Below, piece by piece: positions 19,101 to 49,100 of a stretch of DNA of 64,000 nucleotides (its first letter is position 1; each line of letters begins with the position of its first letter). A program made the translations under genes and the position numbers. The DNA is from Laetmonice hystrix (Eukaryota). Under the pieces are notes generated by a model. It was not told the origin of the DNA. It searched no databases and was given only the letters and a program-made list of their open reading frames with translations. The DNA lies in NCBI GenBank assembly GCA_965235115.1, contig OZ249438.1, positions 27,776,001 to 27,840,000 of the forward strand. The letters are read 5' to 3'.

Positions 19101-22100
19101 GACTCTTTCAGAATCTGACGATCAGAATCATTGAGCTCAGTCACGATACTCTCGGCACGCTTGTTGATGTCCTTCAGAACAGCTTCATAGGTCCTTGCTC
19201 CAGCATCCAAACCCTGATCAAAGTCACCAGTAACACTCCAAGTCAATGAAAACTCAAGGCTACAACCAAATCTTTATAGAGCTCTATTGAAAAATACAGA
19301 GGATTTATACTAAGATATTATAAAAAGAACTTATGTCTCTGAAAATATTTACAAACTACATGTAATCTCATAAAATGACAACCAAAGTCCCCTATAGAAA
19401 AATACCGAAGATTTATAAAAAAAAAATGCCCACGTAAAGCAAAGCGCAACCTGGTGTTTCTTGCACTGTTCATCCAGGAAATCGAGTGGACAATCGAGCT
19501 GGAGTTCTGATGAACAACTTGTATCTGTCTCTCTCCTCCACAGTTCGAGCCGCAGGACGTCAGACTCAAACTGTTTCCTTGTGGCCACAGCATGTTCACT
19601 TCGAGACACCTGTTCATTCAGAGCAGCACTCAGTGCTTTGTATCGTCGGGATAGGTCACCGAGTGCATCCTCCAGGGGTCGCCTCTGTTCTGCTGGACAC
19701 TGGTGCAGGATTTCTTGGCCCTTTGACTCCAGATCTGTAATGGCTGGGTTGTAGTCTTTAATCTCTGCGAGGAGTGTCTGAAATGGGACGGTAAGGGTTA
19801 GCTGGGGTTTGTTATGGCAAGGTTTATTACATGGTTCAACATTTACTAGAGTCTGAAACGTAATGTGATATAATAGTTAGCAAAGTATCGTACAAAATTA
19901 CGAAATGTATAAAAAAAACATTCAAAGGTTATTATGTGTTATAAGATAATACAGGAGACTTTGAAACCGACCTTGTATTTATCAATTTGTTTTTCTATGT
20001 CACAAGCCTTGAGCCGTATGTTGGGAGCCTGCCCGACGACTTCCTCCTTCTCCCTCAACCAGGCGGTGACTCGGTCAATGTCCTGTTGGAGGGCCTCCCG
20101 GCGGGCCAAGTCCTGGGCCAGCTCTTTGTGACGGGCCTGAGCGCGGTCACCAAGCCGGTGGTGATCTTCACATAGCTCGCTTACTCTGCTCTCCACCAGG
20201 GAGCGCTCTGCCGGGCTCACGTCACGCAGCAACGAGTCCCCCTGGCGGCGGATACCGTCTAACATCGTCTGCTTGCTTTCTATGTCACGAACCAGGGCCT
20301 GTATGGGAAAACAAAGTACTGTAAGTTTCGTCTGAAAAACTCTACTGGGTGCCTCCTAGAATACGTCCCCCTCACATCAGGGAATAGGAGGCTTACTTTC
20401 AACATATTAATGCAAGTTGTGAAATTCTCAAACATACAGATGCATGGCAATGCTATCATCCACATAACTGGCCTACCGGTGACATCTGTCGCTGGACTTC
20501 CCTGTTTTATCTTGGGTTTACTTACCATTTGGAGGCTCTTGTTAAAACAAATGCTAAAAAAGACACTAGAAACACCAAGTGAATTATGTTTCTGCTACTT
20601 TGGCGAAACCAGTCGAGCTAAAATATATAGGATGTACACAACTGGAAAATTAGCCCAAACAGACAGGTAACAAAAACAGAAACCAAAACTCAATAATTTA
20701 GAATTCTTTACAACTCACACATCCCACCCCACTGAGGCACCTGAACGAGCAGGGTGTGAGGGTGAGGGGCGTTTGGTGTACCCCAAACGGTAGGGAATCC
20801 ACCTCGTCGTAACCCTCTACCTCATCATACTCATCACGATCCTGTATCACAAGTATTTCAAAAGAATAAGAAAGAACGGTCTGACTAAATCGAGTACTCT
20901 CTACAAGTAACACATTTTCAAACATCTGCATCATCTGCTATACATATCACATTGCAAAATCTGTAAAATAATGTACTGTTATGTACATGTGTACTCACGA
21001 AGTGGTCTTGAAGGGCAGTCTCAGCCTCGGCAACAGCTGCACCGGGGGCCTGACGACGACTCAAAGCTACTTCCGATTCTTTGAGCCAGGTGGTGTAGTC
21101 AGAGATCTCCTTCATGAGGGTTTCATACGTTGTAACCATCTGTTCGGACGCTTGCAACTGGTGACCCAGCGTCTGAAGGAGTTCTGCATGTTTACGCTCG
21201 ATTGAACTGAAATAAAAAAGGTAGAAGCAACATAAAAAATAAGATAATGCTTGGAAGATTATTTTTAATTCCTGGATGTATTCAAGAGGCTTTATCAAAT
21301 TTGCCAAATTTCTAAGTTAAATTTTCGTAAAAATTGACCTCTTTTTTACTCCGATCCAATCACCTGATGTGGTCACTGAGGGGGCTACCACTGACTGATG
21401 TGGTCACTGAGGGGAGACGACTGACCGATGTGGTCACTGAGGGGAGACGACTGACTGATGTGGTCACCGAGGGGAGACGACTGACTGATGTGGTCACTGA
21501 GGGGAGACCACTGACTGATGTGGTCACCGAGGGGAGACGACTGACTGATGTGGTCACCGAGGGGAGACGACTGACTGATGTGGTCACCGAGGGGAGACGA
21601 CTGACTGATGTGGTCACCGAGGGGAGACGACTGACTGATGTGGTCACCGAGGGGAGACGACTGACTGATGTGGTCACCGAGGGTAGACGACTGACTGATG
21701 TGGTCACTGAGGGGAGACGACTGACTGATGTGGTCACCGAGGGGAGACGACTGACTGATGTGGTCACTGAGGGGAGACGACTGACTGATGTGGTCACTGA
21801 GGGGAGACGACTGACTGATGTGGTTACTGAGGGGAGACGACTGACTGATGTGGTCACTGAGGGGAGACGACTGACTGATGTGGTCACTGAGGGGAGACCA
21901 CTGACTGATGTGGTCATTGAGGGAAGACGACTGACTAATGTGGTCACTGAGGGGAGACGACTGACTGATGTGGTTACTGAGGGGAGACGACTGACTGATG
22001 TGGTCACTGAGGGGAGACGACTGACTGATGTGGTCACTGAGGGGAGACCACTGACTGATGTGGTCATTGAGGGAAGACGACTGACTAATGTGGTCACTGA

Positions 22101-25100
22101 GGGGAGACGACTGACTGATGTGGTCACTGAGGGGAGACGACTGACTGATGTGGTCACTGAGGGGAGACCACTGACTGATGTGGTCACTGAGGGGAGACGA
22201 CTGACTGATGTGGTCACTGAGGGGAGACGACTGACTGATGTGGTCACCGAGGGGAGACGACTGACTGATGTGGTCACTGAGGGGAGACGACTGACTGATG
22301 TGGTCACCGAGGGGAGACCACTGACTGATGTGGTCACCGAGGGGAGACGACTGACTGATGTGGTCACTGAGGGGAGACGACTGACTGATGTGGTCACTGA
22401 GGGGAGACGACTGACTGATGTGGTCACTGAGGGGAGACGACTGACTGATGTGGTCACCGAGGGGAGACGACTGACTGATGTGGTCACCGAGGGAAGACGA
22501 CTGACTGATGTGGTCACCGAGGGGAGACGACTGACTGATGTGGTCACCGAGGGGAGACGACTGACTGATGTGGTCACCGAGGGGAGACGACTGACTGATG
22601 TGGTCACCGAGGGGAGACGACTGACTGATGTGGTCACCGAGGGGAGACGACTGACTGATGTGGTTACTGAGGGGGCTACAACTCACCTGATATGTTCGGT
22701 GACCAGCTCCTGGTCAGTCTTACTAACATCTTCACACACCTCGGCCCCGACTTCACTCAGCTCTTGAATATCTTCGCACTTCTCCGTCAATTTCTCCGAC
22801 AGGTTCTGAAATCAAACAAACGCAACAATCGAGGTGAGATCGAGATTTACAAAGTACATGATGATGTTACCCCAGTCCTCTTTCAGCTGCTGCGGGGAAA
22901 GGTCTTTCTCATGTTGTCACTAATGGCAGATTGCACACCGCGGATCCACGACTGCAGGGAAGCTGGAATGCCATACCACTGTATGACATATACATACATC
23001 TGGCAATGAATAGCGCCATGTCAACTGCAATATTTTGTATACCAGCTTGCACCTTGTTGTCGGTAGTGTATTTCGGCAAAGAATGCGAGGATACTTGGAG
23101 AAGAGTGGGGAGAAGCTTACAGAGGAATGTCTTTTTATTCATTTTCTCAACATATTCTTACATCTGCTACACTGCTGAAAACCACCTTTGTGGATGGTTC
23201 CTTTCCCTGTTAAAATTATATCCCATTCTATCCACGATATGCTATCACTTGACCGGTAAAGGCAAAGAAAGCCTGCCATCTTATTTCCCTTGTTGCTGAT
23301 CTGTATTTCTCGATGCAATCTTTACCCTACTGGCCCTGACCTTGGTAGAATCTAGTGTCCGGTTGTACTCCTCATACTGGACAGCGAGGTAGGAGGACTT
23401 TCCGCCGAGTTTGGTTTGTTTGAGAGAGAGTGCCATCCTAGTGGTTGGACTGGGAGACCGACTGGTATACGTGCATGTCTCCGTCCTCTTCTCTCGGCTC
23501 CTTCCCCCACGAGATGATGAAAGGTCTGGTTCGTTCTGGTCCAGAATAATGTCCACTTCCTTATGTCTCTGTGAGGGTTTACCAGGTCTAGATGAGGCAC
23601 TCTGACACCAGTCACGGTGGGTGGAATCGGGATGGTCATAACTCCCACAGGAATCAAGACAGTTATTGTGTGGTCTGGTGCCGGAGGGTAGGCGTTTACT
23701 TCTGCTGGATGGGACAGCCTTCGGTTCTTGTGATGGAACACTTTCACCACGTGATCTACAGAACTTTGTCTGGTTGGAGCGTCCAGGAGCTGCCCTTGAA
23801 GAGTTCGTCGTGTGTTGGCCTTTACATTCATTTTCTGTTATAGTCTTACTCCTCTGAGAACGTGTTTTATACCTTTTCCGCAGAACCCACTTTGGGTGTA
23901 CGGTATTTTCACAACGGCATACTGAATCAGTTAGCGGTGTGTCAGCAATTGTACCATTTCCCTTCCGTTCAGGGTTCAGCCACTTTGGCTGGCGGTCGAT
24001 CCAAACATTCTGTCCCACCCGGCCGCCATCAACTGAAGACACACAGCTGCCCATTATTACCCAGACAAGTAAGATAACCTCAGTCAATGAGGCCAACTTT
24101 ACCCATGTAAGCTGAGATTTATTACTATCCGTGACGCCTTCACACTGCGCACTGATCCAGGTTGTATATGACTCCTCTGTTTGACCATCCCAGACCTCAG
24201 TCAGAATCCTGGCAGACATCCATCCTGAAACCTCTGAGTTATCTTCCTGTGCCGGCCCAGTCAGACCCACAACCTGTTCAGACTGCTGCAGTACGGAGAT
24301 GTTGGAGCTGTGACCGAGTCCAGGCTGACTGTACCGGGGACTACATGCAACCTCTGGGATATGACCGGTCCTAACAGATCATCTGGTACCAAGGGGTAAG
24401 AATATCGTCCTGATCCCATGATTGCCGGCTGGGGTTGGGGGTAAATAACCGATCACTCTATGGGGTAACCAACAAATACATACCAATACCATAATTGTGG
24501 GGTTCCCAAGCTGTGATCTAGATCTCTGCTGTTTGACACTCAGTGTCCCTGGTCACGAACACCCTAACTCTAACCGATAATCTCACCCAAATTAACGTAA
24601 CTCAGGCCTTATAGCTCTATATAAGCTGGTATTATAAACCCACAGTCATCCAACTAGTAACCTCTTCTCAATTATGTTCTAGGTTTCTTTCCAACTTAAA
24701 TTTTTCAAATGGTTCCACGATTTTTAGCAAGTACATTTCCCAGCCAAATGTCCTTGAACATTATAGGTTACATTGATGTGAGCGTATGCTGGACTACCGA
24801 GTCCATCTATTCATTTACATAGTAACACAGCTTACAGTTTACACATTCTTACCTGCCTTAATCCCGTCTCCTTATCTTGATTAGTTGAAAGTTCAGGTGT
24901 TGGCATACCTTCAGCCGCCTGACACTCTACCTTCCAGTCTCCACCCTGTAAGGATTGTTCCTGGCAGATACAGCCTCTCGAGTCCATCACAACCCTGGCT
25001 CCATAAGTGGTACAACCACTACACATGGGATACTCTACAAAATGTCCATCTCTACTGACATCTGGCGGTGATACCAGGTCGTCTCCATCACAGACTCCTT

Positions 25101-28100
25101 CTCCAGTTGAGTATCCCGACACAGGTCTCTCATGTTGGCCTCTAGAGGGCAGCACTGAACAGTCATCCTGATCTCCAGGGGTCGAGATGTTGTCCCTCTC
25201 GACCTCAAAGACTCTGCCATCCTGGGAGGTTTTAATCGAGTCTATTTGATTTGTTTCTACAGACGTTTCCCTGTTTCGGTTGGTGTGTGGATTCACTGGC
25301 TGTGTCTGGTGTAGGTGTTGGTCAAGATTATGCTCTTTTAGAGGTTCCCACGTCATTCTGACGAGGACACGGCCCGCATCACCCGTCACACCCCACTGAA
25401 CAATAACCCAACCATTGACCCCAAGGTCACGGATTACCGAATCTAACGGAGTCGGCATGTTGACGTCTGCCATCCTGACGTTACGTCTGACGTCACACCA
25501 GCTGATTGAGAAGAAACTGAGTTTCTGTCGGCCTTGCTTTCCTTACCACGGAGTTACTCCCTTGGACTTGAAGGACGAAACGTGTCGAAAGTTTCGAAAA
25601 TATGGCAAGGAATCTTCCAACTTTGCAAGGCTGCAGAAACTCGTTGTTGATGAGTTTGCTTTTTTCATTAAATAGTGTTCTTATTCTTTCTTACCTGTTG
25701 CATAAACAATGGCGAAAATCGAAATTTCTCAATGTTAGGGCAAGAAAGCGAAGAACAGAAAACTAGCAACTTGTGACATCCGTGTGAGCCACCATGGTCG
25801 TCCGTAGATGGCGTCTGTTACCAGCGTCCCAGTGGTGGTCAATAAGTACAGGGCGGGGCTGCTGGTGGTAACAGGGATGTTGGAGACATGAGACTGAAGA
25901 GTTGACACCACGGAACGCCTATAAACCACACACAGCCGTGTCCCAACTAGTGAAGGTGTGATAGGAAAACATGTCCCAAGGTGATCTCTATGTCCATACA
26001 TCACATACAAGTCCGTAACGTCTGTGTCCCCCTGACTACTCTCTGCCCTTTGATGACAACTCTATGAAGGTAGAATCCCCCGGATTTATCTCCTAGTTCA
26101 CAAACCATCAAAACGCGCTGATCTCCCATGGAGGTCATCTCTAGTCGGTAATATAAAGGTGTAGTTGTAGTGACAGGGAACTGTAGAGGTCTCACAGCTG
26201 AGTGGAGCATAACCTTATCAAAGATATGACGCAGTGGGCTTCCAACTATAAAGTGCCTTATGACCCCTCACTATAAAACATCAAACTGGGGAGCTCTTTG
26301 AAATATCCGACTCGTACAGTGGTTGTCAGGCTGATTTACACAGTTACCCAGATATTGGAATCAGAAAAACCTGTCAGTAGGGGATACTGATTTATCTTTT
26401 AAACTGGGGGGGGGGGGTATTATAATACACGCGGTCCTGACCAAAGGGTCATTATTATAACCTGGATGGGAAGTCGGATAGCAATCAATAAACACGGAAT
26501 GTTTGGTATTCATGGTCCTCAGATGTCTCTCTAAGTTAGCCATCATAAAATAGTAGTTGAAATAATGACTTAAAGACTCACCAATACCTTATCTCTGTGA
26601 TTTTTTTCGCTAATGAACTTGACTCCTGTAGAATAAATCAATTAAGAGTTCCGTCTAACACTTGCAGTCGTTTTTTATAGAGAGGAAGACTGCTAAGGGA
26701 ACAGACGGGACCTGAGGTTTCCCAACCAGTAGAACTTAGTAGTATGTTTCATTTCAAGCCCGATTTCCGGCGATAAATCTACCCCAGTAATACCAAATGA
26801 AGGCGGTATAGGACAACTGGTTTTTATAGGAGGTTATAAAACACTTGAGGCTGGAATGGTGCCGATAACAAAAAGTCCGACGTATTCTGATCAATCCTGC
26901 AGACCCCAGAGCCCAATAAAATAGCACTGATCCATGTCTGACACCGAGAGGGACAGTGCCTCCCTCTGGCGACGGATCAAGTTATTACTAACAGGTGATT
27001 CCATGCTAATGGCGTCGGGCCGATACAGACTGCGGATTTTTTACTTGAGGGAGATTAACGGATAACTTAGTTTATAAATCGGAGTAGTAAGGCTTTTATG
27101 ACAGATCGATACAAAAATCCACTATTTCGTACAAAGAAGATTCACATTCTGTTGCACTGATGTTTATCCCACTCCCATGTCACAAGATCACAGAACAAGC
27201 ACATTTTTTTTCATTGTTTTTAATTTGGTAACATCTTTGATTCCCAGGCAGTATAATAAACAATAAACTGGAAAATAGACGGCAATATATGAATATAATC
27301 GCATAAAATAGAACTAAATTATTGTTTGTAAAATTGCAAATGACATCAATAAACTCATTTATACATAATACAATAACAGAACCCCTTATACCGTATAATT
27401 CCGTTTAAACACATGGTTTCTTATATTGAAGTAAATTAGGCCCATCGGAACTAAACTACACTAAACTTATACACGCTGAGGAAGTACAACCACTAATATA
27501 TTTATATAAGCATGTTGTATGGGCTGATTATGAACTAAAAGTAAACCCTACAGACACCCGGGCCTGGACGTCTAAATGGAAAATATTGTTAAGTTAAACG
27601 AAAGATCAATCTCATTTCATATCACAAATAAATGACAATAGTACTAATTATCATCACTGAAATCCCTGCATAGGACGGAATGTTTCTTGGAGTATCTCAG
27701 GAACGATTAAAATAAAACTCAAATCAGTCACTTTGTATCACAGGTAATCTCCTCGAAAAAATATCACATTGGTATTATGTTAGGAGTTAGGATCACTAAG
27801 AAGTCAGGGACGGAGTTCTTTTTGGAAAAATTATAAGACAAGTCAAATTATCCGCTTCACATACGTGTACTCCTAACAAGTAAATATCACAATTGTGTTT
27901 TCTTTATAGCTAAAATACAGGATCACTAAAATTTCAGTGAGGACGGAATCCTTCTTGTAATATTTATAAGGAGTTAAACTAAAACCAAACCATTATTCCC
28001 CAAATAAGAAACTAAAACAATCTTTAAGTCAAACACTAGAAAGATACGTGGAATGCCTACATTATTAATTCCAGCACTCTGCCCCTTCATAATGTCTAGT

Positions 28101-31100
28101 CAATCGTGGCTATTAGACAAGCTATTTCTGTTTTATATCCTACTGGGTAATATACTATAGGACTTGTTAATATCCTGCTTGACCAATATGCTGTTGCCAC
28201 TACTATTCAAATAAACAAAAAATGGACTTTTTCCATTGAGAGTGCGAAAGCATCCAATGGTTTTAAATTCATGCATTATCGGCATTCCCAGGCGTAGGAA
28301 ACAAGTCTTTGTTAAAGAAGTCTGTGAAGGCATGGTTTCCTCTTTATGAATACACAAATAGTTCGCAGGTATTTTGAACCACCATTTTTGTAGGTCGAGG
28401 CACCGACCTACAAGCATTCACTGAATGTATGTACTACAAGGCACCAATAAAGTCTATCAGCACACGTACAGTCGGTCAGGAATTCATTCTTACTGGAGAC
28501 TTCGGGACATTGTTCGCTTCGCCAGGTCATCAGATATAACCCTGTCGTTCAGAACTCACGACTGAACCTTTTTTTTAAGTCTTCCAGATATCTTCTTGAG
28601 TTTATCTGCTTGTTTTTGAGCCATGTCCAGGGAATCGTCTAAGTCCCTTGACTTTGAGTGTTTTTTCCTGGGTTTTGTGTTGGATTTGTCCTTGGTTGTG
28701 TTTTTAACTGGTGCGGTGACCACAACCCTGGGTTGGTGACCCGGAGTGGGGCCAGCCGGTATCAGGAGGACTGGGGGTCCGGGGATAGTGTTTACTGGCT
28801 GGTAACCTTGTGTACCAGGGACCGGGAACATACTTCCATTGGTGACGGAGCCGTGTCCTCCGAGAACCACCCCGGCGGCCTGGGGCAGCGAGCCGGGAGA
28901 AGGGTGGGAAACCACGGGGGGTACTGTCTGCGGGTACGGTACCGAGTGCGGGGGTACTGTCTGCGGGTACGGTACCGAGTGCGGGGGTACTGTCTGCGGG
29001 TACGGTACCGAGTGCGGGGATACTGTCTGCGGGTACGGTACCGAGTGCGGGGGTACTGTCTGCGGGTACGGTACCGAGTGCGGGGGTACTGTCTGCGGGT
29101 ACGGTACCGAGTGCAGGGGTACTGTCTGCGGGTACGGTACCGAGTGCGAGGGTACTGTCTGCGGGTACGGTACCGAGTACGGAGGCACGTCTCGGACTGG
29201 GACACTTGGAAGTCTCCTCTGGCCGGGCGAGTGTTGGTTAAAAGGATACTGATCACAGATTTCTCTGGGGTGTGAGGTGTATAATACCCCGGAGGGCGGA
29301 GTGAACGCCCGCCGCCTTGGTTCATACCGTTTGTTCCCTTCTAGCCGTCCCTTCAAGTCAATGTCAGCATCAGTGATCAGGCTCTCAATGCTATGCCGTC
29401 TCTGTAGGCGATGTGGGGATTTCTCTAACCTATCAAAGCGGACAGATGAGTCTCGAGGAGGGAGCTTTCTGACTCTTCTCCTCTCCTCCCTCCCTGGGTC
29501 CTCTCCCTTACTGGGACCCTCCTCCGCCCCTCCGTACTGGACCTTCAGGTCCCGTACCTGACGGAGCATATACTTTAGAAGGTCTTTCCTGGTTGTCGTG
29601 CCGCGCTCAGACTCGATGTCACGAGGGGGTTGACTCACTCGGCGGCTACCCTCCCGATTCTTGTGCTTCTTGTGTTTATCGGGCTTTTCCTTCTTCTTCT
29701 TTGATTGACTCCGTGATGAGGGCGCGTCTACTGGCTGGCCAATCAGAAGCAAGGATTCTGGTAGTGGAGGCTGTGAGTTGACCTTGACCGACGCTGTTGT
29801 TGGAGCAGCCTGGGCACTGATAACGTCCTCAGTTTGCCCTTGCTCAGTCTGAGTGGTCATTGCTCTCTGTGCCACCATCTGACCAAACGTCTGGGTGGAG
29901 AAGCTCCGAGCAGTTACAGTGAGAGGATCTGTGGAGGAGTCCTTGGTTTCCTTGACCACTTCACTTTGTGCTGCATGACCGCCAGCAGGTTCTCGGGGCT
30001 GACTATCGATGATCAGGCCCTCCAGTTTTTCAAGAAGGTTCGCAGTGTCTTCTTCACACGAAGGCTTGTTAGAGGCGGTTGCCTCTTGATGCGTGTTACC
30101 TGTGTTTACGGCTCCACCGGTAGGGTCTCTGAGCATGGGCATGGGCATGGCTGTAGCTCCAGTTGAGTTAGTTTGACCCGATTGTGGTGTCTGCCTTGAC
30201 ACAGCACTAGTAACACTTGCAGCTGGTCTAATAGTGGCCTCCTCAAACCCTGTGTTGTCCAAGGGCTCTCTGTCGTCCCCAGGTACAAAAGGTCCACTCC
30301 TGGTGCCATCAAAGGACTCTATGTATCTTTGATATGCTTGGATGTACGAGGGCGGCTCTGGGATGTCTCCAGTGGCGGGTAAAGCCAGGGTACCTGTGTC
30401 TGGAAGTACTCTGTCACCTAACATCGAGTCCTGCCCTGGTATTGGCATTGTCTGTAGTAAAACACTGCTTGTTCCACCTCCTCCTGTCGCAGTCAACATA
30501 TTGCTCCCTGGGTACGATGACCATGTAGTACCATTAAGTTTTATCAGGGTAGAGGCTGGGGTCTGGGGTCTGGTACCATCATCCCAAGGGGTCTGAGTGC
30601 AGGCATCCTCTGGGGTCTGAGTCGTTCTGTGCCGTGGGGTTTGAGTCGAGAAGTCCTGGCTGGACACACTGACTGAGGGAGGCTCTGGTTCCGTCAATCC
30701 AGATACCCAGGACTTGGCATCATCGCCCAGGTCGTCATATTCCTCCTCGGGTTCCTCAGTATAAAAGCCGTTTATACCTGGCTCCTCCTCTTCCTCTCCT
30801 GTCTCCTCCTCCTCGTCAGTTGAGTCTGACACCAAGTCGGTGTTTGGTTTGAGGATGTGTGTGATCTGCTCCACCTCGTGATCCACCACCTCCATGTGCC
30901 TGCGGACAGTCTGAGTGGAGATATCCGGACCCTCAATCAGCCACATGTTATCGGGGCACACGCCCCCTGGTGGCGGTGGTGAGAACTGTGGCGCCCTCGT
31001 GTGGAGATTGGTCACACCAGCGGTACAACTGATTGGTATGACAGTCACCTCATCCTCCTCGCCATCCTCCTCACTATCCCTGTGCTGAGTTTGTCCCAGT

Positions 31101-34100
31101 TCCTGTGTGTGAGGCACACCCTGGGTATCCTCCTCGTCCACCAACATCACTCTGACTGGGTAGAACTGTGTAGATACCGTGAGATCCTCCACACCCCTGG
31201 AGCCTGGGGTAGGTTGTAACGGTAGGGCAGACTCCTGCCCTGGCTGGTCCACTGCCATCAGTTCCTGCATGGCTCGATCTGCCTCCAGTACGGCCAGCAC
31301 CACGTTATCCTGAGAACTATAACTACTGGTAGCACTATCACAAACGTCCACCCTGTGCCGGTTACTCTCAGTCAACAAACGGTGGTCGTCAAAGGTCCTC
31401 TCTAGGTCACTCTCTACACGCACCAAACCTTCATCAGTCTGAGTGGATGCGACACTCACAGTCCTTCCCCTCGAGTCGGAGTCAGTTTGTAAACCAAGTT
31501 CCTCTGCCAGAACATGTTCCACACTGATGTTGATGGAGACACACTCAGTCTCACCGTACCCCGACTCCACATCACTTTCCTGTGGTTCGTCCTGGAACAC
31601 CTTCCCTCCTACCTTTGGCAGTCTCCTCCGTTTCCTGTCAGTGTCAGTTGCCGAGGATTTGGCTGATCTTGGTGATGAAGGTCCTGAGGCAGCTCCCTGG
31701 CTCACGTCAAGGTTCTGGTGATTATCTGAGTGAGGATGGATGAGTGTACGTGGTTTGGCACCACCACTACTAGGCTCAGGTAACCTTCTCTTGCCTGGTT
31801 TTGACAGATTCCTCCTTGATGACAGAGATGTTGCTGACCTGTCAGTCACTGCCGAACTCCCTGACGTCGTGTTCCCTGACCTGGGCCCAGCCCTCGATCC
31901 CCTCACAGGACTAGGTGACGGCCGTCCTTGCGCAGACCCTCGGACGGGACTCTTGGATTGTCCCCTTGTTGGCACATTAAGATCCCAGGAGGTTGGGTCA
32001 GGTTTCTGTCTGGGAGGGGCTCTCCTCACCGGTGATTGGTCCGCCGTCCGCCGGGGGATTCTACTAGCGCCACCTGGTGACACTGACCTATGTCGTACTA
32101 GAGACCCTGGAGGTGACCTTGATGTAGCTCTGCCCTGGAGTCGTGGGATCCGACTGGGACTCTGACTTAAGGTCCGCGGGTTGGACCTTCCTCCAGGAGA
32201 TTCTTGTCGGTTTCCTCCAGGAGGTCGAGCAGTCCTCCTGGACCTCTGTGAGCTGGAGCGTGGACTCCGGAGTGGTATCCGTGAGGGTGACGCTTGCCGG
32301 GACCTCCAGTCACGACCTCCTGATGACCTGATGTCGGCTCGAGCCTCGAGACCACGTCCACCGTCTGCCTCCTGGTGACTGTCAGTCCACGGCCTGCCGG
32401 CAGGTCCCTGTGTCTGTGATCGGCCTGTGTCTGAGGGCCTGCCGGTGTGTCCCTGTGTCTGGGATCGGCCTGTGTCTGAGGGCCTGCCAGTGGGTCCCTG
32501 TGTCTGTGATCGGCCTGTGTCTGAGGGCCTGCCGGTGGGTCCCTGTGTCTGTGATCGGCCTGTGTCTGAGGGCCTGCCGGTGTGTCCCTGTGTCTGTGAT
32601 CGGCCTGTGTCTGAGGGCCTGCCGGTGGGTGCCTGTGTCTGTGATCGGCCTGTGTCTGAGGGCCTGCCGAGGGAGTCCCTCAGCACACTGAGGGTAGTCT
32701 GCGTGCCAGCCTCAGAATTCCTCCCACGCTGAAATATCAAGGAGGACACTGGTTAGACAGAGCTCCCAACTTGTACAGGGACAGCAACTAAATGACATGT
32801 TCCTAACCCACAGACAATATACATGCAGCTTTCAGCTGTGGACCGGTCACAAGCTGTGAGGGTACCTTGAGTGCAACCTGTAAGAGGCTTACCACTGATC
32901 CTTGTTTATCCAAACACGTACTGACCTGCCATTTACATGTACATTCTTCCCCACAAAAGCTGTCCGGTGGAAAATGCCAATTTAAAAGCAAGTTTTAATC
33001 GCCGTGATTGCAAAACAAGGACTTCAAGCCAGCAACCAAATGACAGAGGAAGTGACATACTTTTGTAAACAACCAAGTGCCTAAATTTCTCTCACTGACT
33101 CTGAATCGAGATGTTGAATTCCGGGGTACTTTTTCTCTATGAAATTAGAAGGAACACAGTTTTTGGTTTGAAAATTCCACATTCAGTGTGACTTAAGTGA
33201 CTTCCATACTGGGAACGAGTGATTTTGTACCACTCCAAAGGCTTGCCTTCACATGTTTGTGTTATCGGTGGGTCAGGGGAGAAATCCTTCCAAATGCTAC
33301 AGAAACCAATCAAGAGATGCCACGGCCCATATCTCAATCAAGAGTTTATTGTTTTGTCATCGTACTGACTGAGGCCGACAGGAACAGATAGATAAAACTA
33401 AAATAAACGAGAGACAGTGCCATTAAGGGGTTACTCGAATCCTTGGGTGTAGAGACAAACCCACTGTCTCATGGAACATAACAAAGTCAAAGTGACTGCC
33501 GACCAGAAGTCCAACTCTGGTTACCTCCCCCCTGCTGGTTATGAATGTCTACATTTACTCCCGTCACCCAGCTGCTGGTTATGAATGTCTACATTTACTC
33601 CCGTCACCCAGCTGCTGGTTATGAATGTCTACATTTACTCCCGTCACCCAGCTGCTGGTTATGAATGTCTACATATACTCCCGTCACCCAGCTGCTGGTT
33701 ATGAATGTCTACATTTACTCCCGTCACCCAGCTGCTGGTTATGAATTTTACTCCCGTCACCCAGCCCACAGTCACTTGGGGTCAGGTTTCCTCCACCATT
33801 GTCGACCCCGGCTAACTGTCAGTTTCTGAGAGTGTGTGTTACTATGTGTATCCATATGTACTGTTACCAACGGGCCCCAAGGTGTTCGTAGAAGGGAGTT
33901 AAATTTTATAAAGTGTTCCGCGATACCTCCGTCCCGGGATCCCGGGTACCTATATCCATTGATATCATACATACATGCATGCACTCACGTGTAAGTGTTA
34001 GACGAGCGGGTTAGTTTTAACACTTAGCAATTGTTAGTCAGTTAGTGAACTACTAGGTACAAACAAGGAATATTTAGTGGACTACTAAAAGCATAAATGA

Positions 34101-37100
34101 CGGATCAGGATGGAGGGATGGGGCTGAGATACGGCTAGCAACCATCCACGTTAAAGTCCAACTACTGTACATTGTGCTGCTTGTGTCTATATTTTGGCGT
34201 GTTTAATGAAGCATTGGGCATGCTAGGCCGTGAGGGCATGGCAAGTGCTGAGTTACATTGGTTTGAAATGACTTGTTTGAATCAACCAACACTCCCTGGA
34301 TGTGTTATAAGCGGCGATTAAATCTTCATATTGCCGCTTGTTACACATTATGTGGCCGGTCTGGGGTATGAGTATATACAAGCACATGGCAATTATTGGA
34401 CAGCCGCCTCTCCCGCCCCCCGCACAATACAAAACACACAAAAGAGATTTCTCGAAGGACCATTGTTTCTTTGTAACTCCGTTACTTGTCAGAATAATGA
34501 AAGACTTCAGTTAAAATCCGAGATTGCCGTAGTCATTAACAAGGTTTTACCAGCAGTATAAACACTCCTCTCTCTCTATGAATGGGAAATATTGAATTGT
34601 TGAAAAATATCACGTCTACTTAGTAAATCCTAACGGGTAACGTTTATAACAGGATTATCTGGGATTAAAGCTTTACTGCTAACGAGATCACTAATCTGGT
34701 TAACTGATTCCTTCTTAATAATGGTGTGGACAACAACATTGGTCATTCATATGGTAGTATCTTAACATTCTTTCTGATCTAGAACTTGTGGTGGCACTAA
34801 TCGCATAAACATATTTTTGGACAACACATACATGCACAAATTAAGATAAAGCTGTCCGTGCAACTATGGGTATACCGTAAATCATATTAAAAACAATATA
34901 ATGGGAACAACTCACTTAACATGGGTTTCCACAAAAACTGTATTACCATGCTATGAGGGATTACTCAGCCAATTGTGGATTTAATAAGGAACTGAAGCAT
35001 TTCCTAAATAAACATAGGTTTCCAACAAGAATATAGTACCAAACTCTAATGGATTATTCAACAAAAATGGATGTAAAAAGGAACTAAAGCATTATTTAAA
35101 TATAAACCCACCTGTTTGTGCTTTGTTCAAGCTGAGTGATTCTCTAGTCCTTGGCTGTATGTACCCTCCATGGGGTACCAGGGTACACCCTTGGGTACTA
35201 GTACAAACTGCCAGTTATTCAGGTCTCTCCACATGGTCTCAGAAGATCTTGCTGTGAGTGGGGAAAAAGTCATCCAATCTACTCAGCCAATCAATGGTCG
35301 TGATTGGCTGCCAATCAAACAGCTCCTGACTCTGACAGGCTCTCGGCCCTATATTAGCCTCTCGTTGGGACGGTGCACACACTGAGGGGGGGGGGGGGAG
35401 TTTCGCGGGTTTCCAATGCTGTAGTCCTAGCTGGGTTGAACACAGGGTACGAGAGGGTACGAGTAGAAGCTCATCTCTACCCACACCCATTCTACACTAC
35501 ACCTACCCAAACGTGAGAGTAGTACTATACTACTCGCTTCACTTACAAGCGTCATATACAGTTCACGACCTCAATAATTCTCTGAGCATGCAAAGACAAG
35601 ACCGTAACAATGAACCCAGCGCTTTTATGGCGGCATCTCTACACAACAGTCCCTATCACTTCTATGGCATGCTATTACCATTTGAGGGTTTGGTGGTTTA
35701 TGACAGGTAGGAATATCATGAGAAGTTGGACAAGTCATCGGACCCAAATGCTTACTTCAGGTTTGGGGAATTTAATGGCGAGACACTCTGAGGCGACTCT
35801 GTCTGAACAAACTGACGGGAACCACGTACAATCGCTACTCATGGGAACCTCTACAGGCTCAGACAAGTCTGCCTCAGGCATCAACTTAGTTCCTTAACTC
35901 AGCAATAGGATTTCCCACCAACCCATGATTCTCCTTACATTCAGCTTCGTAAGCGTCGCTTTACGGCAAATCCTAGCTGAGACGGCTTTCTATACAGGCT
36001 GAGCTACATTTAACCATCGCTAAGTTTCCATTAATGTTTTTGTGCGAGGGTGAAACTGCTCAGGAATTGTTATAATAACGCTATCCATGGCGACACAGGG
36101 AACTCTCTCACAGCGGTATCATATCTGTAAGGGGTTGAGTGCGGCAGACAGACAGCTGCTACATTAACTGTTACTAATGACCACGGATGGCGACACAGGG
36201 AACTCTCTCACAGCGGTATCATATCTGTAAGGGGTTGAGCGTGGCAGAGAGACAGCTGCTACATTAACTGTTACTAATGACCACGGATGGCGACACAGGG
36301 AACTCTCTCACAGCGGTATCATATCTGTAAGGGGTTGAGCGCGGCAGAGAGACAACTGCTACATTAACTGTTACTAATGACCACGGATGGCGACACAGGG
36401 AACTCTCTCACAGCGGTATCATATCTGTAAGGGGTTGAGCGTGGCAGAGAGAGAGCTGCTACATTAACTGTTACTAATGACCACGGATGGCGACACAGGG
36501 AACTCTCTCACAGCGGTATCATATCTGTAAGGGGTTGAGCGCGGCAGAGAGAGAGCTGCTACATTAACTGTTACTAATGACCACGGATGGCGACACAGGG
36601 AACTCTCTCACAGCGGTATCATATCTGTAAGGGGTTGAGCGTGGCAGAGAGACAGCTGCTACATTAACTGTTACTAATGACCACGGATGGCGACACAGGG
36701 AACTCTCTCACAGCGGTATCATATCTGTAAGGGGTTGAGCGCGGCACAGAGACAGCTGCTACATTAACTGTTACTAATGATCACGGATGGCGACACAGGG
36801 AACTCTCTCACAGCGGTATCATATCTGTAAGGGGTTGAGCGCGGCACAGAGAGACAGCTGCTACATTAACTGTTACTAATGATCACGGATGGCGACACAG
36901 GGAACTCTCTCACAGCGGTATCATATCTGTAAGGGGTTGAGCGTGGCAGAGAGACAGCTGCTACATTAACTGTTACTAATGATCACGGATGGCGACACAG
37001 GGAACTCTCTCACAGCGGTATCATATCTGTAAGGGGTTGAGCACGGCACAGAGAGACAGCTGCTACATTAACTGTTACTAATGATCACGGATGGCGACAC

Positions 37101-40100
37101 AGGGAACTCTCTCACAGCGGTATCATATCTGTAAGGGGTTGAGCGCGGCAGAGAGACAGCTGCTACATTAACTGTTACTAATGACCACGGATGGCGACAC
37201 AGGGAACTCTCTCACAGCGGTATCATATCTGTAAGGGGTTGAGCGCGGCAGAGAGACAACTGCTACATTAACTGTTACTAATGATCACGGATGGCGACAC
37301 AGGGAACTCTCTCACAGCGGTATCATATCTGTAAGGGGTTGAGCGTGGCAGAGAGACAACTGCTACATTAACTGTTACTAATGACCAGGGATGGCGACAC
37401 AGGGAACTCTCTCACAGCGGTATCATATCTGTAAGGGGTTGAGTGCGGCAGTCAGACAACTGCTACATAAACTGTTACTAATGACCTGGGATGGCCAACA
37501 GCCAAGGTGATGGGATGGGAGTAAGGAGGACACAAGGGTAAGAAAACACGGACACCATTCTTGATACAGCACAAGACATCAGTTATCATGTCATAGGTTA
37601 GCTGACTGGTTCAGTCTTATATTCTCTTGATGTTTCAAATCTTTTTCCCTTCACTAGAAATAGTTACAACCGGAGGCTGAACATGGAATAAGTAGTTCTA
37701 ACAGCAAGTGATGTTTGCAGAATATATATCATTATCAAAATCCAAATTCTTTTTAGCTCTCGATCTGAACCATCTTGAAGAAAGATATGAGAGAAAGCTG
37801 TGAATCTAGAAAGATGTCAAGTGAAATATAAAAGCGTTATCATTAAAGTTGGGGAGGAATTACCTTAATCAACATGGGCATACTAATATATACAGAGACC
37901 AGCGGTCAGGTTCTGACCACCAGGCCTAGGACGGTCCGTGAGCAATCATCCAGATTAACAAGCAAAGCAGAATCGATGGCATCTACTCTACTGAAGGTGA
38001 CAGATACTAAACTACACTAACCCCACTTCCCGCCAGGTGGCGCGCCCAGACTACAGGGCCCGGTCAGGGTGTTATCACCACAGGTATACGGCCAGGTACC
38101 TTACACAATGGAGCACACAACCACTACCACACCCTCCATACACTAGTACCGACACCAAGTGGTCTGCACGTAGAAGGTATGGGTCAGGTCAAAGCGGGAT
38201 CACATTACTGGGTTGATCCCTACAGTATTGATGGACTGGATGCTTCACCTATGGACTGGTATTTCTATCTTCATAATATCAGGTGGTCGGAAACTCTTAG
38301 GTTGCAATAGTTATGTCTATGTGGCGTGCATTATCTCTTTAATCTAATATGGATGCAATATCCACAGGGATATCCAGTGATTGGATCTCAGTAGCTCAGT
38401 TTGGTGACTTAACTTACCTGCCACTAGGTGGCACCAAGTATAGAATAGTATCAAGGCTGGCTTACCTTGAGGCGTCCTCTCCTGTCAGAAAGCTGGAGTT
38501 CTCTGGCTGACTGCAGTTTCTCGATTTGTTTCTCGAGGTCGTCGAGCCCAGCGTCGACTTGGGCTCTCTGTCCGTGGTAGAGGCTACACTTGTTGAGAAA
38601 CTCCTTCCGTCTCTTCACTAGGTGGTCAATGTCAGCCAGCACAGTTCGCCACTGCTCCGCCAGGGGGAGCATGTGTTCTCTGACCCAGTCGGGGTTGTCC
38701 TTGGCCAGACGACCATAGCGGGAGGAGAGTTTGGACAGGACACTCTCCTTCTGACTAATGGCACCACGCAGCTCCTGCAAACAGACCGACATATCAAACA
38801 CAGCGCCAATACCAAACTAAGTCTGTTTTTTTTTTTAATCAAACCTCGTTATAAATTACTGAGCCAGTATTTGGATGCAAATGCAGATCGAAACATCCCT
38901 TGCCAGAAACTGCTCCCTGAGGGTCAGTAAAATATAGGGCCGTACCTGGAGGTGCTGGAGTTCCCGCTGAGCGGGGTCGATGTGTAGTTTGGCTGGTTTA
39001 CTGGCCAGTTGTTGGATCTCGGTTTGTCGGGCAGTCAGCCAGCCAACCAGATCTTCCTCCAATCGTTCTGCTGCCTCCCACGTCCTGATGTCCTCCTGTG
39101 TCCGTGACACGTGTCCCTCCATGGACAGGATAGCCTGAGAGAGGTTCATATTGACATCTTCGGCTTGTCTGGTGAGAGGCGAGTCGAGGTTGGTGGCCGC
39201 AGAGTCTGGGCTGCTGTCAGTACTGCCAAAGTTCTCACACTTCTGGGCGGCCGTCATGATGTCAACCCGGTACTGTACGAGTTGGTCTAACAGGGCCTGG
39301 GAAATGGCAATCATTCACGTGTCACAGTAACATGTTAATGTCAAACTACATCTTACTCCTCCTATCAAACACCAGGGGTTGTTTCAATAAGTGTGTCAGA
39401 CTGTCCAACAGGCGACGGTCAGGCTCTCGCTTGGTTGTAGGGCCTGGAACTTTTGGTCCATCACCAGTTCGACAGTCCTAAGCCATTATTGAAAGAGCCC
39501 CCTGAATATGTTCTCCGGGACTTGAAAACGTCTCGGGTATGGTACTGAATAATGACCTCATACAAATATAGGCTGACCTTGGCCTCCTGGTGGCGACCTT
39601 GAGCAGCGCTGAAGGTTTCTGGAGGAGGCTGCTCCAGTTGGCGTACCATCCAGGGCTGAGCTGTGTCCTGGAGGTGGCTCCTACAGCTCTCTAGGACGGC
39701 TTCATACTGACTCCAGCGTACTACTACCTCCGACAGACGCTCCTGGAGGTTAAAACAACATATATATAGATGTCTTCAAAGATTTAATCAATACTGACTG
39801 ACTGGTTCTACTGCTCATCCAAAGTAAACCATGTGACTGAAATCTGGTGATTATCACTAATAGTACTCAAGAATACTAGTACAGTTTCTATTGGTCCTTA
39901 TCATGGCTTTATTATGATGATGAAAGATAATCTAACTAGAAAAGGACATAAACGAACAAAACAATAATATCTGCATATTATTATCTCTTTTCTAGTGAAA
40001 AAGCATATGAACAAATTATATAAATTCTATAGAAAATTTGATAAAGGGATGAACATGAGGTAAATTTTGCCTTCTTGTAACTAAAATCTGAAAAAGCATA

Positions 40101-46100: not shown

Positions 46101-49100
46101 AACTCCTGCAGGATACAAACCAATCATCCACATGATAACACGACTTGGAGCATACCTTCCTACAACATACAATCAGCAGGTCAGGTTACGCTACTAATCA
46201 CTCACCTTGAGCGTGCTCAGACGTGATTCCACATCTCTCCTTGTCCCGGCAGAGTTGTGCATTGTTTGAAGTTTCTCTGCAGCACCATCTAACCATGTGG
46301 CATACTCCTCCGTCGCCGTCTGGTAGCGGCGGTGATCATTTACATGCAGGTCTACCCGCCGCATGATGTCCTGGACATAACAGGACAAACCTTTATAGTA
46401 GTATTCAACTTTTACAGATTTTTCAACCTAAATTCACAGAAAGGCACCATGTATAGCATTTCGTTCATCAGTTCACCTTAGTATCAAAGGACAAGAATGT
46501 CAGTTCTACCATCAGTGTGTATTGTCAGAACACACAGGGTCGCTGTACCTCAAGGCAGCCTTACCTTACTGAGTGAAAGCAACGTCTGATACTTGGTGGT
46601 TAACTGAGTGATGGCATGGGAAACCCTGGCGTCTGAGTTCACTTCAAGAAGTCGGGTTGCACGCTGACTGACCACGTCCATGTCAGATTGCCGACGGAGT
46701 AACTCAGCATGTTCAGCCTGCAATGGCAACAGTTAGCCCTTCCAGTTGTCTAATAACGAAAGGCTAAACTATCAACTTCTGAAAAATTCTTCAATTAATT
46801 CATTAGAAGAGACTGATTGAGTTGATTACGTATCAGTTTCAACATTATGGACTGTAGGACTAGTGTGTCAGAATCCCTGTCCCTCAACAATACACCCAGC
46901 TTCTCCAACACAAGTCCATACCTGACAATGTTGGAGCTGCTCCTCCTTCTCCTCCAAGTTTGCCAAGCTGCCAGACTCTTGTCTGAGTCGAGCCTCGGTC
47001 TGTGTAAGCCAGGAGACAAACTCCTCAAACGCTTCCTCATATTGATGCCAACACTCGAGGCAGCTCTCCAAGGTGTGAGAGACTGCCTCCAGCTGGTTGT
47101 GGTAGTCCTCCAGATCACCAGTCATGGCCACCAACTCCTGCTGGATCCGTGGGTGTCCACCTGGTGCCGTGTGGGCCAGCAGAGACTCAGCCGCTGACTG
47201 CGCCCTCTCTAGGTGACCTTCGCCATCACCTAACTCTGGTTGCAGGGCCTAGACATGGATTTTAAGGTCATGACCATCATTAATTTTGAGAGTGCTGGGT
47301 ATATATACACATGACATAACACTCACGTCTTATCAGCAGGGTTTGGATAAACAAATCTTGGGCACTCTCACTCTCATCCAGCTAGCGTCATCCTAACTAG
47401 CACTGTAGAATTGGACTGATAAGAACCTGGAGACTATATCATAATTAACAATTTGATGGCTCCCTCTCCCATCGGACTTTACTGAAGGACACAATACACT
47501 ATAATATGTTTTAGGGGTTCCCACAATTTAATTAGACTAACAGACAACCTACCTTCAGTTTGTCAAGCTTGGCCTTGATACTCAGTTTGTCTCCGTACGT
47601 GTCAGAACAAGCAGCTAGTTTCTCACGAACTGATCGCAGCCAAGTGTTAAATGCTGTACATAAGTCATGGAAAGCTACATGTTCCTGGACCGCAATCTCT
47701 GCCTGCTGCAAGGACTCCTACAAAAACAGCACACACAACCTCATCAGACAATATGTCTCAGCTATTTGGTCCACACAAATGGTATTAATATATCATACCC
47801 TTGGCATCAGCCTTCACTCTTAACTCATGAGAAAATATTCCCACAATTCTAGAAACACTACCCTTCCATGCATCGTATTTTTCCGTTCCCCTAGACCTCC
47901 GACTCACCTTAACATTAGCCTGCAACGTGCGGTACTGTTGAAGCGTTGTAGTACTGTCGTCTGCCACCAGGCTGCCAGGACTTGTCACAGCCAGATCCTG
48001 GGCCTTGGTGACAGCAGAGTCAATGACGTGTTCATACGCTGTCACATCCTGATGAAGGCCCTGCAAGGTTACAAAAACAAAACCTTCAACTTCATATGAT
48101 AACATTTGCAATGGGTCGTAATACTGAATGCATCATCTGAATAAACTTGAGAATTAAAAATACTATTAACGATGTAATATAACTAATGGTGATGAACTTA
48201 GTCTTCCATGAAAATCGAAAATCTAAACCTAAGTACCTCACGTAGATTAAGATTCGTTAGTTTCCAGCACTCTCGGTTCTTTCTGCTACTCACCTTGACC
48301 TTTTGGAGCAGAGCCTTTTTCTCACTGAGGTCAGACTTGGGGTCAACACAGTCCTTCAGCCTCCGGTCTATATCTCGCAACCACTTGGTGATCTGATCGC
48401 TGGTGTCGCTGTAATCGACCCACCGGAGTAGGCACGACTCCAGGGCGGAGCGTGTGTCTGAGACACTAGAAATGAAGACATCCCAGTCAGCCTGGAGGGA
48501 GGCCAGGTCCCTACGGATAGTTTCTCGTCCTGCTGGACTGGTTGAGGTGAGGGTCTTGTCACCCCAGGTGTGTGCGGCGTGGATCAGTGACTGACCTTCC
48601 TCCTTCATCACCACAAACTCCTGTAACAGTGGGGAACTTTCGGTCAGATGGACATTTTACATTTATCCTTTCATATAATGCACATTTCAAATTTAAAATG
48701 TATGCATTGACTGTCATTGACCATAACTACATACATGTAGACTCTGAAGTTGAGCCTGAAGGGCCTGACGGTCACTGGACAGATCACTACAGGCTGACAG
48801 TTTCTCACTCGCTGATGTCAGCCACTGGGAGCACTTATCATAGCTCGTCTTGTACTGAAGGTGGTCGTCCACATGCTGCTCCAACTTCTTCAATGTGTCC
48901 TGTATTGGAAGGCAGAGTTACAACAGGACAATTAGTCCATGAATAACGCAGGACACTGTTCAATACTCTTATACAAGAATTCGTCTGTTAGTCACAAAGC
49001 AAGTAATTTCAACATTAGGTAGGGCTCTATTTTTTATCTCTCCCTCCTCAGGGTCACTTGTTACCTTTGAGGCAGTGAGTTAAGTAGGCCCGTATTTTTT

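What the first reader, a model, noticed from the sequence alone, without database searches (positions are those of the whole stretch)
28554..28561. Stop codon embedded in a consensus donor: one exon, two fates
Seen: the giant ORF ends ..GTT CAG TC|G TGA GT, so its TGA lies inside a GTGAGT donor at phase 2. Read-through gives a protein ending at KKKVQS that lacks everything downstream, including the presumed KASH anchor. Splicing at 28559 keeps the frame only into a phase-2 acceptor, and two such exons lie downstream. I found no canonical AATAAA on the gene strand in 26.5-28.5 kb (only ATTAAA near 27218). Inference: a switch between a nuclear-envelope isoform with a ~1,600-1,730-aa elastic insert and a free cytoplasmic isoform.
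Basis: partly seen in the sequence, partly recalled or inferred. Interest (0 to 1): 0.75.

Follow-up and report, generated by a model that had tools for sequence, protein, structure and literature searches.

The report
Ancient terminal exon of a nesprin gene
The stop codon does sit inside a GTGAGT, but comparison with seven related loci suggests it is the real, conserved end of an old alternative last exon of a nesprin gene, and the donor-like letters around it are most likely chance.

Summary
On the minus strand a 4,169-nt exon (32728-28560) ends TC|GTGAGT, so TGA (28558-28556) lies inside the hexamer at phase 2.

That overlap is not special. Any phase-2 GTRAGT donor carries an in-frame stop. 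The next constitutive exon (22805-22687) ends the same way. The site scores 0.5 bits on my donor matrix, against 7-8 bits for sure donors in this gene.

The exon belongs to a nesprin (SYNE-type) gene. It is conserved at the same intron position in seven other animal loci, including an annelid.

In 12 of 13 lineages the reading frame closes 6-13 residues after a conserved C-terminal helix. No other locus has a usable donor there.

The flanking exons are both phase 0, so skipping the exon keeps the frame.

Best reading: this is an ancient alternative last exon. It gives a KASH-less nesprin with a disordered tail rich in TQT motifs (the LC8 anchor). Envelope-anchored isoforms skip it.

Their exons have no detectable homologues. 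No transcript data were available.

The parts
38466..38774 (-). Upstream spectrin-repeat exon, 309 nt, phase 0 to phase 0, with donor AAG|GTAAGC
   Evidence: It is homologous to the 309-nt annotated exon in the annelid locus L003. Donor score 7.1 bits.
28560..32728 (-). Giant exon, 4,169 nt (1,389 codons plus 2 nt). It enters in phase 0 and encodes a conserved disordered region ending in a basic helix.
   Evidence: Acceptor. Homologues (best hit E = 5e-204). Conserved motifs. No Pfam domain. The first Met is at residue 487, so it must be spliced from upstream.
28556..28558 (-). TGA stop codon, proposed to be the true end of the KASH-less isoform
   Evidence: The ORF end is conserved 6-13 residues after the MKxLT anchor in 12 of 13 lineages.
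28554..28559 (-). GTGAGT hexamer overlapping the stop. It is donor-like on the intron side only.
   Evidence: Score 0.5 bits. Not conserved in L001-L007.
27219..27224 (-). ATTAAA, the only canonical poly(A) hexamer within 3.3 kb downstream of the stop. It is followed by a GU-rich stretch, so it is a candidate 3' end giving a 3' UTR of about 1.35 kb.
   Evidence: Inference only.
24853..25501 (-). ORF-B candidate exon, 649 nt, phase 2 to phase 0, with donor CAG|GTAAGA. It also contains an ATG at 25473 in a good Kozak context.
   Evidence: Codon usage is weakly coding-like. No homologues.
23341..24370 (-). ORF-C candidate exon. It has a phase-2 acceptor at 24370 or a phase-0 acceptor at 24285, and a donor AAG|GTCAGG in phase 0. 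It contains the ATG at 24054 (MGSCVSS).
   Evidence: Codon usage is weakly coding-like. No homologues. It shares one weak motif with the ORF at the same position in L002 (E = 0.013).
22687..22805 (-). Next conserved constitutive exon, 119 nt, phase 0 to phase 2. It ends ATCAG|GTGAGT with the same embedded TGA.
   Evidence: The same 119-nt exon is present in L002, L003, L005 and L006.

Best explanation
The window lies inside a nesprin (SYNE-type) gene on the minus strand. The 4.2-kb ORF is an ancient alternative last exon.

When the acceptor at 32728 is used, translation runs through about 1,390 residues of disordered sequence carrying conserved short motifs. It ends at the TGA, directly after a conserved basic helix. 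The transcript is then presumably polyadenylated in the AT-rich sequence downstream, with ATTAAA at 27224 as the candidate signal. The product keeps the N-terminal rod and lacks the KASH anchor.

When the exon is skipped, 38466 joins 22805 in frame and the spectrin rod continues toward KASH. On this reading, the GTGAGT over the stop in this species is most likely coincidental.

Shown here: exon reality, position, phases, and conservation of the stop. Inferred: polyadenylation, exon skipping in vivo, and function.
For: - Nesprin identity: Pfam Spectrin and Spectrin_SYNE1 hits on 10 flanking ORFs.
- The exon is real and old. There are 17 homologues, ten of them at E <= 1e-10. Eight conserved motif blocks were found across 13 sequences.
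- Exon order around it is the same in the window, in L002 and in the annelid Ridgeia locus L003.
- The first Met is at residue 487, so the exon needs upstream exons.
- The ORF ends 6-13 residues after the MKxLT anchor in 12 of 13 lineages. The best GT at the ORF end scores at most 0.6 bits in all 8 loci, and L005 has no GT at all in the last 60 nt.
- Flanking junctions are phase 0 / phase 0 in the window, L002 and L003. Skipping reads ...RRGRLK|NLSEKL... in frame.
- The giant exon joined directly to the next conserved exon hits a stop 5 codons after the junction.
- The Ridgeia annotation ends one model at this stop. It starts the KASH-bearing model 5 kb downstream.
- KASH-less nesprin isoforms made by alternative 3' ends are documented in human (PMC3388047) and in fly (PMC11230431).
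Against: - No transcript data of any kind were available.
- In this window GTGAGT is perfect on the intron side.
- Two long downstream ORFs, B (236 codons) and C (365 codons), have acceptor and donor phases that restore the frame. Their codon usage is above all 51 intronic control ORFs on one of the two models. So read-on splicing in this lineage is not excluded.
- Only one canonical poly(A) hexamer lies within 3.3 kb of the stop, and it is 1.3 kb away.
- The closest relative (P0001, 43-53% identity by two measures) gave no DNA.
- My donor matrix uses consensus frequencies typed from general knowledge, not a trained model.
Confidence: 0.58

Rival explanations
1. One reading: a composite exon with two fates. 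The 5' splice site at 28559 is sometimes used. It would join to ORF-B (25501) and/or ORF-C (24370 or 24285) and then to 22805. That gives a KASH-anchored isoform with an insert of 1,606 to 1,921 aa. When the site is not used, the TGA terminates the protein.
For: - All three read-on paths are open in frame.
- B has a pyrimidine-rich acceptor comparable to real ones and a 7.2-bit donor.
- B and C are far longer than chance ORFs and have weakly coding-like codon usage in the right frame only.
- The part of ORF C upstream of its ATG is also open (108 codons) and coding-like.
- Fly Msp300-PE and -PG show that a giant exon region can either end an isoform or continue to KASH.
Against: - The donor scores 0.5 bits because of GTC on the exon side. 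Nine GT sites inside the exon score higher.
- No usable donor exists at the ORF end in the seven other loci.
- B and C have no homologues and no similarity to the giant-exon family.
- A phase match is only a one-in-three coincidence per AG, and each long ORF contains several AGs.
- B and C can also be read as alternative first exons, with ATGs at 25473 and 24054.
Confidence: 0.22
2. The giant exon plus a partner exon is a constitutive (always included) internal segment of the full-length protein in this species. The embedded stop is then only the automatic by-product of a phase-2 donor.
For: Phase-2 GTRAGT donors always carry TAA or TGA. The constitutive 119-nt exon shows this. The frame is restored by B or C.
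Against: Same as for the composite model. In addition, the canonical rod continues seamlessly when the exon is skipped, the stop is conserved where no donor exists, and the annelid models break exactly here.
Confidence: 0.08
3. The giant ORF is not part of nesprin mRNAs. It would be a nested independent gene, a pseudo-exon, or a poison exon whose inclusion triggers nonsense-mediated decay.
For: Direct joining of the giant exon to the next conserved exon shifts the frame and gives an early stop. No annotated long nesprin protein containing the exon was returned.
Against: - About 1,390 codons are kept open, with eight conserved motif blocks from annelid to this window.
- There is no Met before residue 487, while conserved motifs start at residue 9.
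- The acceptor position is conserved, and the Ridgeia annotation joins the exon to upstream spectrin exons.
Confidence: 0.04

Closest known systems
Human nesprin-1 and nesprin-2 alternative 3' ends (Rajgor et al. 2012, PMC3388047)
   Same: KASH-less isoforms arise when transcription ends inside the gene. There is a stop and a 3' UTR in sequence that is intronic for the giant isoform, and alternative 3' ends and 5' starts cluster together.
   Different: In the human cases an ordinary exon is extended into a retained intron and a few unique residues are added. Here a dedicated exon of about 1,390 codons, with its own acceptor and a conserved C-terminus, is used or skipped. Homology of position with any human site was not tested.
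Drosophila Msp300-PE / -PG (PMC11230431)
   Same: This is a nesprin gene with a giant, mostly non-spectrin coding region. One isoform (PE) ends KASH-less after it and another (PG) continues to KASH. The KASH-less form has its own function.
   Different: The fly region is made of about 100-aa tandem repeats reported as conserved only in Drosophila, and PE ends in a transmembrane-like tail. The exon here has different motifs and ends in a basic helix. No sequence relationship was shown.
Intronic polyadenylation isoforms: 'skipped terminal exon' versus 'composite terminal exon' (general knowledge; a search hit on the topic, title and abstract only, is PMC5928244)
   Same: The choice is between using an internal last exon with its own poly(A) site and splicing past it.
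   Different: Which of the two classes applies here is exactly the open point. Conservation favours the skipped-terminal type.
Partners of the hub protein LC8 (DYNLL) that bind through TQT anchors (PMC6607443)
   Same: The exon has 8 TQT triplets in disordered sequence, several in contexts like FSTQTP. That resembles a validated bassoon peptide.
   Different: No binding was tested. The paper stresses that many TQT peptides do not bind. I found no paper linking nesprins to TQT motifs.

Membership tests
Nesprin (SYNE) gene | Long array of nesprin-type spectrin repeats | tested here: met
   PF00435 Spectrin is above its cut-off on 4 ORFs. PF25034 Spectrin_SYNE1 hits 9 of 10 ORFs, one of them above the cut-off.
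Nesprin (SYNE) gene | C-terminal KASH domain | tested here: inconclusive
   The gene runs off the window at position 1. KASH (PF10541) is seen only in the downstream model of the syntenic Ridgeia locus.
Nesprin (SYNE) gene | N-terminal calponin-homology domains | not testable with these tools
   The gene also runs off the window at 64000. The upstream part is not available.
   GTGAGT is consensus on the intron side and GTC is non-consensus on the exon side, scoring 0.5 bits against 7-8 bits for sure donors. It is absent or weak in the 7 other loci.
   Paths through 25501-24853 and/or 24370 or 24285-23341 stay open. These exons have no homologues.
Alternative last exon (skipped-terminal type) | Own 3' splice site, used or skipped | tested here: met
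   Pyrimidine tract plus AG at 32730-32729, phase 0. The equivalent acceptor is present in L002 and is annotated in Ridgeia.
Alternative last exon (skipped-terminal type) | In-exon stop codon that is conserved as a protein end | tested here: met
   The ORF closes 6-13 residues after the MKxLT anchor in 12 of 13 lineages, whatever the nucleotide context.
Alternative last exon (skipped-terminal type) | Skipping keeps the reading frame | tested here: met
   The donor at 38466 and the acceptor at 22805 are both phase 0. The same holds in L002 and L003.
Alternative last exon (skipped-terminal type) | Poly(A) signal downstream of the stop | tested here: inconclusive
   ATTAAA at +1,332 nt with a GU-rich stretch after it. 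No AATAAA for 4.4 kb. The hexamers are common in AT-rich sequence in all loci.
Multivalent LC8-binding disordered region | Several TQT anchors in disordered sequence | tested here: met
   8 observed against 0.73 expected in the window. In 13 family members, 5-10 observed against 0.25-0.73 expected, at conserved alignment positions.
Multivalent LC8-binding disordered region | Measured binding to LC8 | not tested
   This needs peptide binding assays. LC8Pred was not available.

The most novel reading that the evidence does not exclude
Bilaterian nesprin genes may carry an old 'break-point module'. Its first part is a giant, TQT-rich (LC8/dynein-light-chain-binding) alternative last exon that ends an N-terminal, KASH-less isoform. 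It is followed within a few kb by a short alternative first exon that starts MG..(S/C). That is an N-myristoylation-type start, which would give the C-terminal KASH isoform a lipid anchor. The full-length giant protein would skip both. In this window's lineage a GTGAGT may additionally have arisen over the stop, which would allow read-on.
Probability: 0.3. Interest if true: 0.65.

Novelty: new member of a known kind. Interest (0 to 1): 0.38.

Why it matters
The stop-in-donor overlap itself is ordinary. It should not be used as a signal of regulated read-through, because it follows from intron phase.

What lies underneath is more useful. It is a large nesprin exon conserved from annelids to this genome. 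It has a fixed C-terminus and an array of conserved short motifs, including 5-10 TQT triplets per protein.

If it is a terminal exon, it defines a KASH-less nesprin isoform class much older than the mammalian cases. It also suggests a testable partner, LC8/dynein light chain, for a cytoplasmic nesprin.

It further explains why automatic annotation cuts nesprin genes in two at this point, as in Ridgeia.

Tried and rejected
- Pfam on the giant exon and on ORFs B and C found nothing.
- Word-based homologue searches with ORF B and ORF C found nothing.
- I tested whether B and C are decayed copies of the giant exon. tblastn and an HMM built from the family gave only E >= 0.2, so I rejected the idea.
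- Direct comparison of ORF C with the ORF at the same position in L002 gave only one 15-residue motif (E = 0.013). That is too weak to call homology.
- DNA for the closest relative (P0001/P0018) and for P0006 and P0009 could not be fetched, so the nearest comparison of the stop context is missing.
- Poly(A) hexamer counts do not discriminate, because every locus is AT-rich downstream.
- I did not determine whether the gene is SYNE1-type or SYNE2-type, nor the organism.
- Simpson & Roberts 2008 on nesprin conservation is not held in the library.
- I built no full exon map of the window, so there is no gene-wide count of phase-2 donors with embedded stops. The ORF-end survey and the verified 119-nt exon stand in for it.

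Full report
**1. What is there**

The window has no N. Its minus strand carries one gene along its whole length. Stop-free segments with spectrin-repeat character recur every 0.5-1.5 kb. Pfam gives Spectrin and Spectrin_SYNE1 ('Nesprin-1, spectrin repeats') on 10 of the 11 spectrin-type ORFs tested. The gene is therefore a nesprin (SYNE-type) gene. I did not determine the paralogue or the organism.

**2. The observation**

The minus strand reads AAG GTT CAG TCG TGA GTT. TGA is 28558-28556 and GTGAGT is 28559-28554. The open frame is 32752-28559. A pyrimidine tract and AG at 32730-32729 place the exon start at 32728 in phase 0. The exon is 4,169 nt and would end in phase 2.

There is no AATAAA on this strand until 24123, and ATTAAA is at 27224. 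Phase-2 acceptors exist at 25501 and 24370. The in-frame inserts of 1,606 and 1,733 aa are reproduced, and a 1,921-aa path also exists.

**3. Is the overlap meaningful?**

At phase 2, a GTRAGT donor always places TAA or TGA as the first intronic codon. This follows from the letters alone.

The next conserved exon (22805-22687, 119 nt) ends ATCAG|GTGAGT with the same in-frame TGA. It joins a phase-2 acceptor in frame. The same 119-nt exon in four other loci carries an embedded stop in one further case.

GTGAGT occurs 53 times in the window, against 50 +/- 7 expected from shuffles. Among ORFs of at least 35 aa, 27 of 433 on the gene strand and 23 of 539 on the other strand end in G|TRA|G.

The site is consensus only on the intron side. 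It scores 0.5 bits here, against 7.1, 8.4 and 7.2 bits for the donors at 38466, 22687 and 24853. About 10% of all GT sites on this strand do as well. Nine GT sites inside the exon do better.

**4. The exon is real and old**

A search of 1.8 billion representative proteins with the non-repetitive 1,121 residues found 17 relatives. The best hits scored E = 5e-204, 5e-54 and 1e-48. All are 139-1,526 residues long. Almost all are plain ORF calls on unannotated animal assemblies. One cluster holds a named protein, a 2,001-aa hypothetical protein of the tubeworm Ridgeia piscesae.

I could fetch DNA for seven loci, L001-L007.

Exon order around the giant ORF is the same in the window, in L002 and in the Ridgeia locus L003. 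Three spectrin exons lie upstream. Downstream lie a 119-nt exon and further spectrin exons.

In Ridgeia the annotated model joins the giant exon to ten upstream exons, all of them phase 0, and ends at the giant ORF's stop. The next model starts 5 kb downstream and carries spectrin repeats and KASH.

An alignment of 13 sequences shows eight strongly conserved blocks, among them:
- ESDVESGYGE;
- VVLAVLEADRAMQE;
- GTQTPRHRTTQTPEDAxTQT;
- YxxYIESFDGTxSGPFVP;
- FSTQTFGQ;
- SRKDILKYMLxQVRxLK;
- PRRAYTPPP.

A C-terminal helix, LxxSLxxAxKxAxxMKxLTxxLKK, is also conserved.

In the window the first Met is residue 487, while conserved motifs begin at residue 9. The ORF therefore cannot be an independent gene.

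**5. Where the frame closes**

In 12 of 13 lineages the ORF ends 6-13 residues after the MKxLT anchor. The nucleotides at that point differ between loci:
- L001: AA|GTAAAC.
- L002: GT|GTGATG.
- L003: AA|GTGATA.
- L004: CGT TAA.
- L005: GAT TGA, with no GT in the last 60 nt.
- L006: GAC TAA.
- L007: TTT TAG.

No GT near any of these ends scores above 0.6 bits. The stop is conserved and a donor is not. That is the pattern expected of a true protein C-terminus.

**6. Phases**

The upstream donor (38466, AAG|GTAAGC) is phase 0, and so is the acceptor of the 119-nt exon (22805). The same holds in L002 and L003. Skipping the giant exon gives ...RRGRLK|NLSEKL... in frame. The giant exon joined directly to 22805 runs into a stop 5 codons after the junction.

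The exon is thus either terminal, or it needs a partner exon running from phase 2 to phase 0.

**7. The candidate partners**

ORF B (25542-24835) has an acceptor at 25501 that scores like true acceptors on my crude scale, and a strong phase-0 donor at 24853. ORF C (24378-23284) has acceptors at 24370 (poor tract), 24285 and 24208, and a modest phase-0 donor at 23341.

Both ORFs are far longer than chance allows. Their codon usage is weakly coding-like in the open frame only: +0.06 to +0.19 bits per codon. The 51 intronic control ORFs average -0.29 and -0.40 on the two models.

Neither ORF has a detectable homologue. Neither resembles the giant-exon family. L002 has a 358-codon ORF at the position of ORF C, with a 6.2-bit phase-0 donor, but it shares only one short motif with C.

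A phase match is a one-in-three event per AG, and each ORF holds several AGs. Both ORFs also contain ATGs in a good context (25473 and 24054), so they may equally be alternative first exons.

**8. Best reading**

The exon is an ancient alternative last exon of the skipped-terminal type. Inclusion gives a KASH-less nesprin ending in the conserved helix. Skipping gives the rod that continues toward KASH.

The GTGAGT in this species is probably coincidental. Given G-TGA, only the two following letters are needed. I cannot exclude that this lineage has gained read-on splicing.

The mechanism class is known. Human nesprin-1 and -2 make many KASH-less variants by ending in intronic sequence (PMC3388047). 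Fly Msp300 has a giant-exon isoform that ends KASH-less (PE) and one that continues (PG) (PMC11230431).

**9. Poly(A)**

The only canonical hexamer within 3.3 kb of the stop is ATTAAA at 27224. It is followed 20-45 nt later by a GU-rich stretch. It is a reasonable candidate but not evidence. All loci are 60-71% AT downstream and full of such hexamers.

**10. Limits**

- There are no transcript data.
- The organisms of the related loci are unknown, except Ridgeia.
- DNA for the closest relative is missing.
- The splice matrices are approximate.

Noticed in passing
window 28560-32728 (-), exon residues 9, 429, 605, 695, 703, 711, 945, 959: The giant exon has 8 TQT triplets against 0.73 expected from composition. 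All 13 family members have 5-10 against 0.25-0.73 expected, at conserved alignment positions such as GTQTPRHRTTQTPEDAxTQT and FSTQTFGQ. TQT is the anchor of the LC8 (dynein light chain) binding motif (PMC6607443). I found no paper linking nesprins to it.
   Followed up: partly
window ATG 24054 (-); L002:16609; L003:33158; L005:21194; L006:16787: Between the giant exon and the conserved 119-nt exon, five loci have an ATG opening with an N-myristoylation-type start: MGSCVSS, MGASESA, MGTNASK, MGVCKSF and MGTCTCN. A candidate phase-0 donor follows in four of them (none was scored for L003). The Ridgeia one is the annotated start of the KASH-bearing model. The motif pattern is permissive, so chance is not excluded.
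   Followed up: partly
contigs holding P0001 and P0018 (no DNA available): In the closest relative, giant ORFs of 1,377 and 1,385 aa lie about 11 kb apart on one contig, with a 318-aa ORF between them. On a second contig, a 1,385-aa ORF is followed 6.4 kb downstream by a 1,128-aa ORF. This could be a tandem duplication of the giant exon or an assembly duplicate.
   Followed up: no
window 32391-32669 and 28917-29182 (-): There are two tandem arrays inside the giant exon, with units of 45 bp (6.2 copies) and 33 bp (8.1 copies). Both unit lengths are multiples of three, so the frame is kept. They encode RPSDTGRSQTQGxTG and VPYPQTVPPHS repeats that fall outside the conserved blocks of the family alignment.
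   Followed up: partly
window 21364-22674; 33532-33746; 36087-37495; about 49075-50264: The introns hold large minisatellites: 30 bp x 44 starting 12 nt after the donor of the 119-nt exon (open in two frames on the gene strand), 40 bp x 5, and 100 bp x 14. A roughly 66-bp periodic array is seen only as evenly spaced GTGAGT matches on the plus strand.
   Followed up: no
L003 (Ridgeia piscesae, JAODUO010000470.1): The public annotation cuts what looks like one nesprin gene into three models: one of at least 956 aa, one of 2,001 aa, and one of 4,681 aa with KASH. The second break is exactly at the giant exon's stop. All ten exons upstream of the giant exon in the 2,001-aa model are phase 0.
   Followed up: partly
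window 8317-9351 (-) and 1-1140 (-): Two more long non-spectrin ORFs (345 codons and at least 380 codons) lie on the gene strand, with coding-like codon usage and no Pfam hit. They are probably further disordered inserts in the rod near the 3' part of the gene.
   Followed up: no
It would keep phase 2 and could feed into 25501. No evidence beyond the letters.
   Followed up: no
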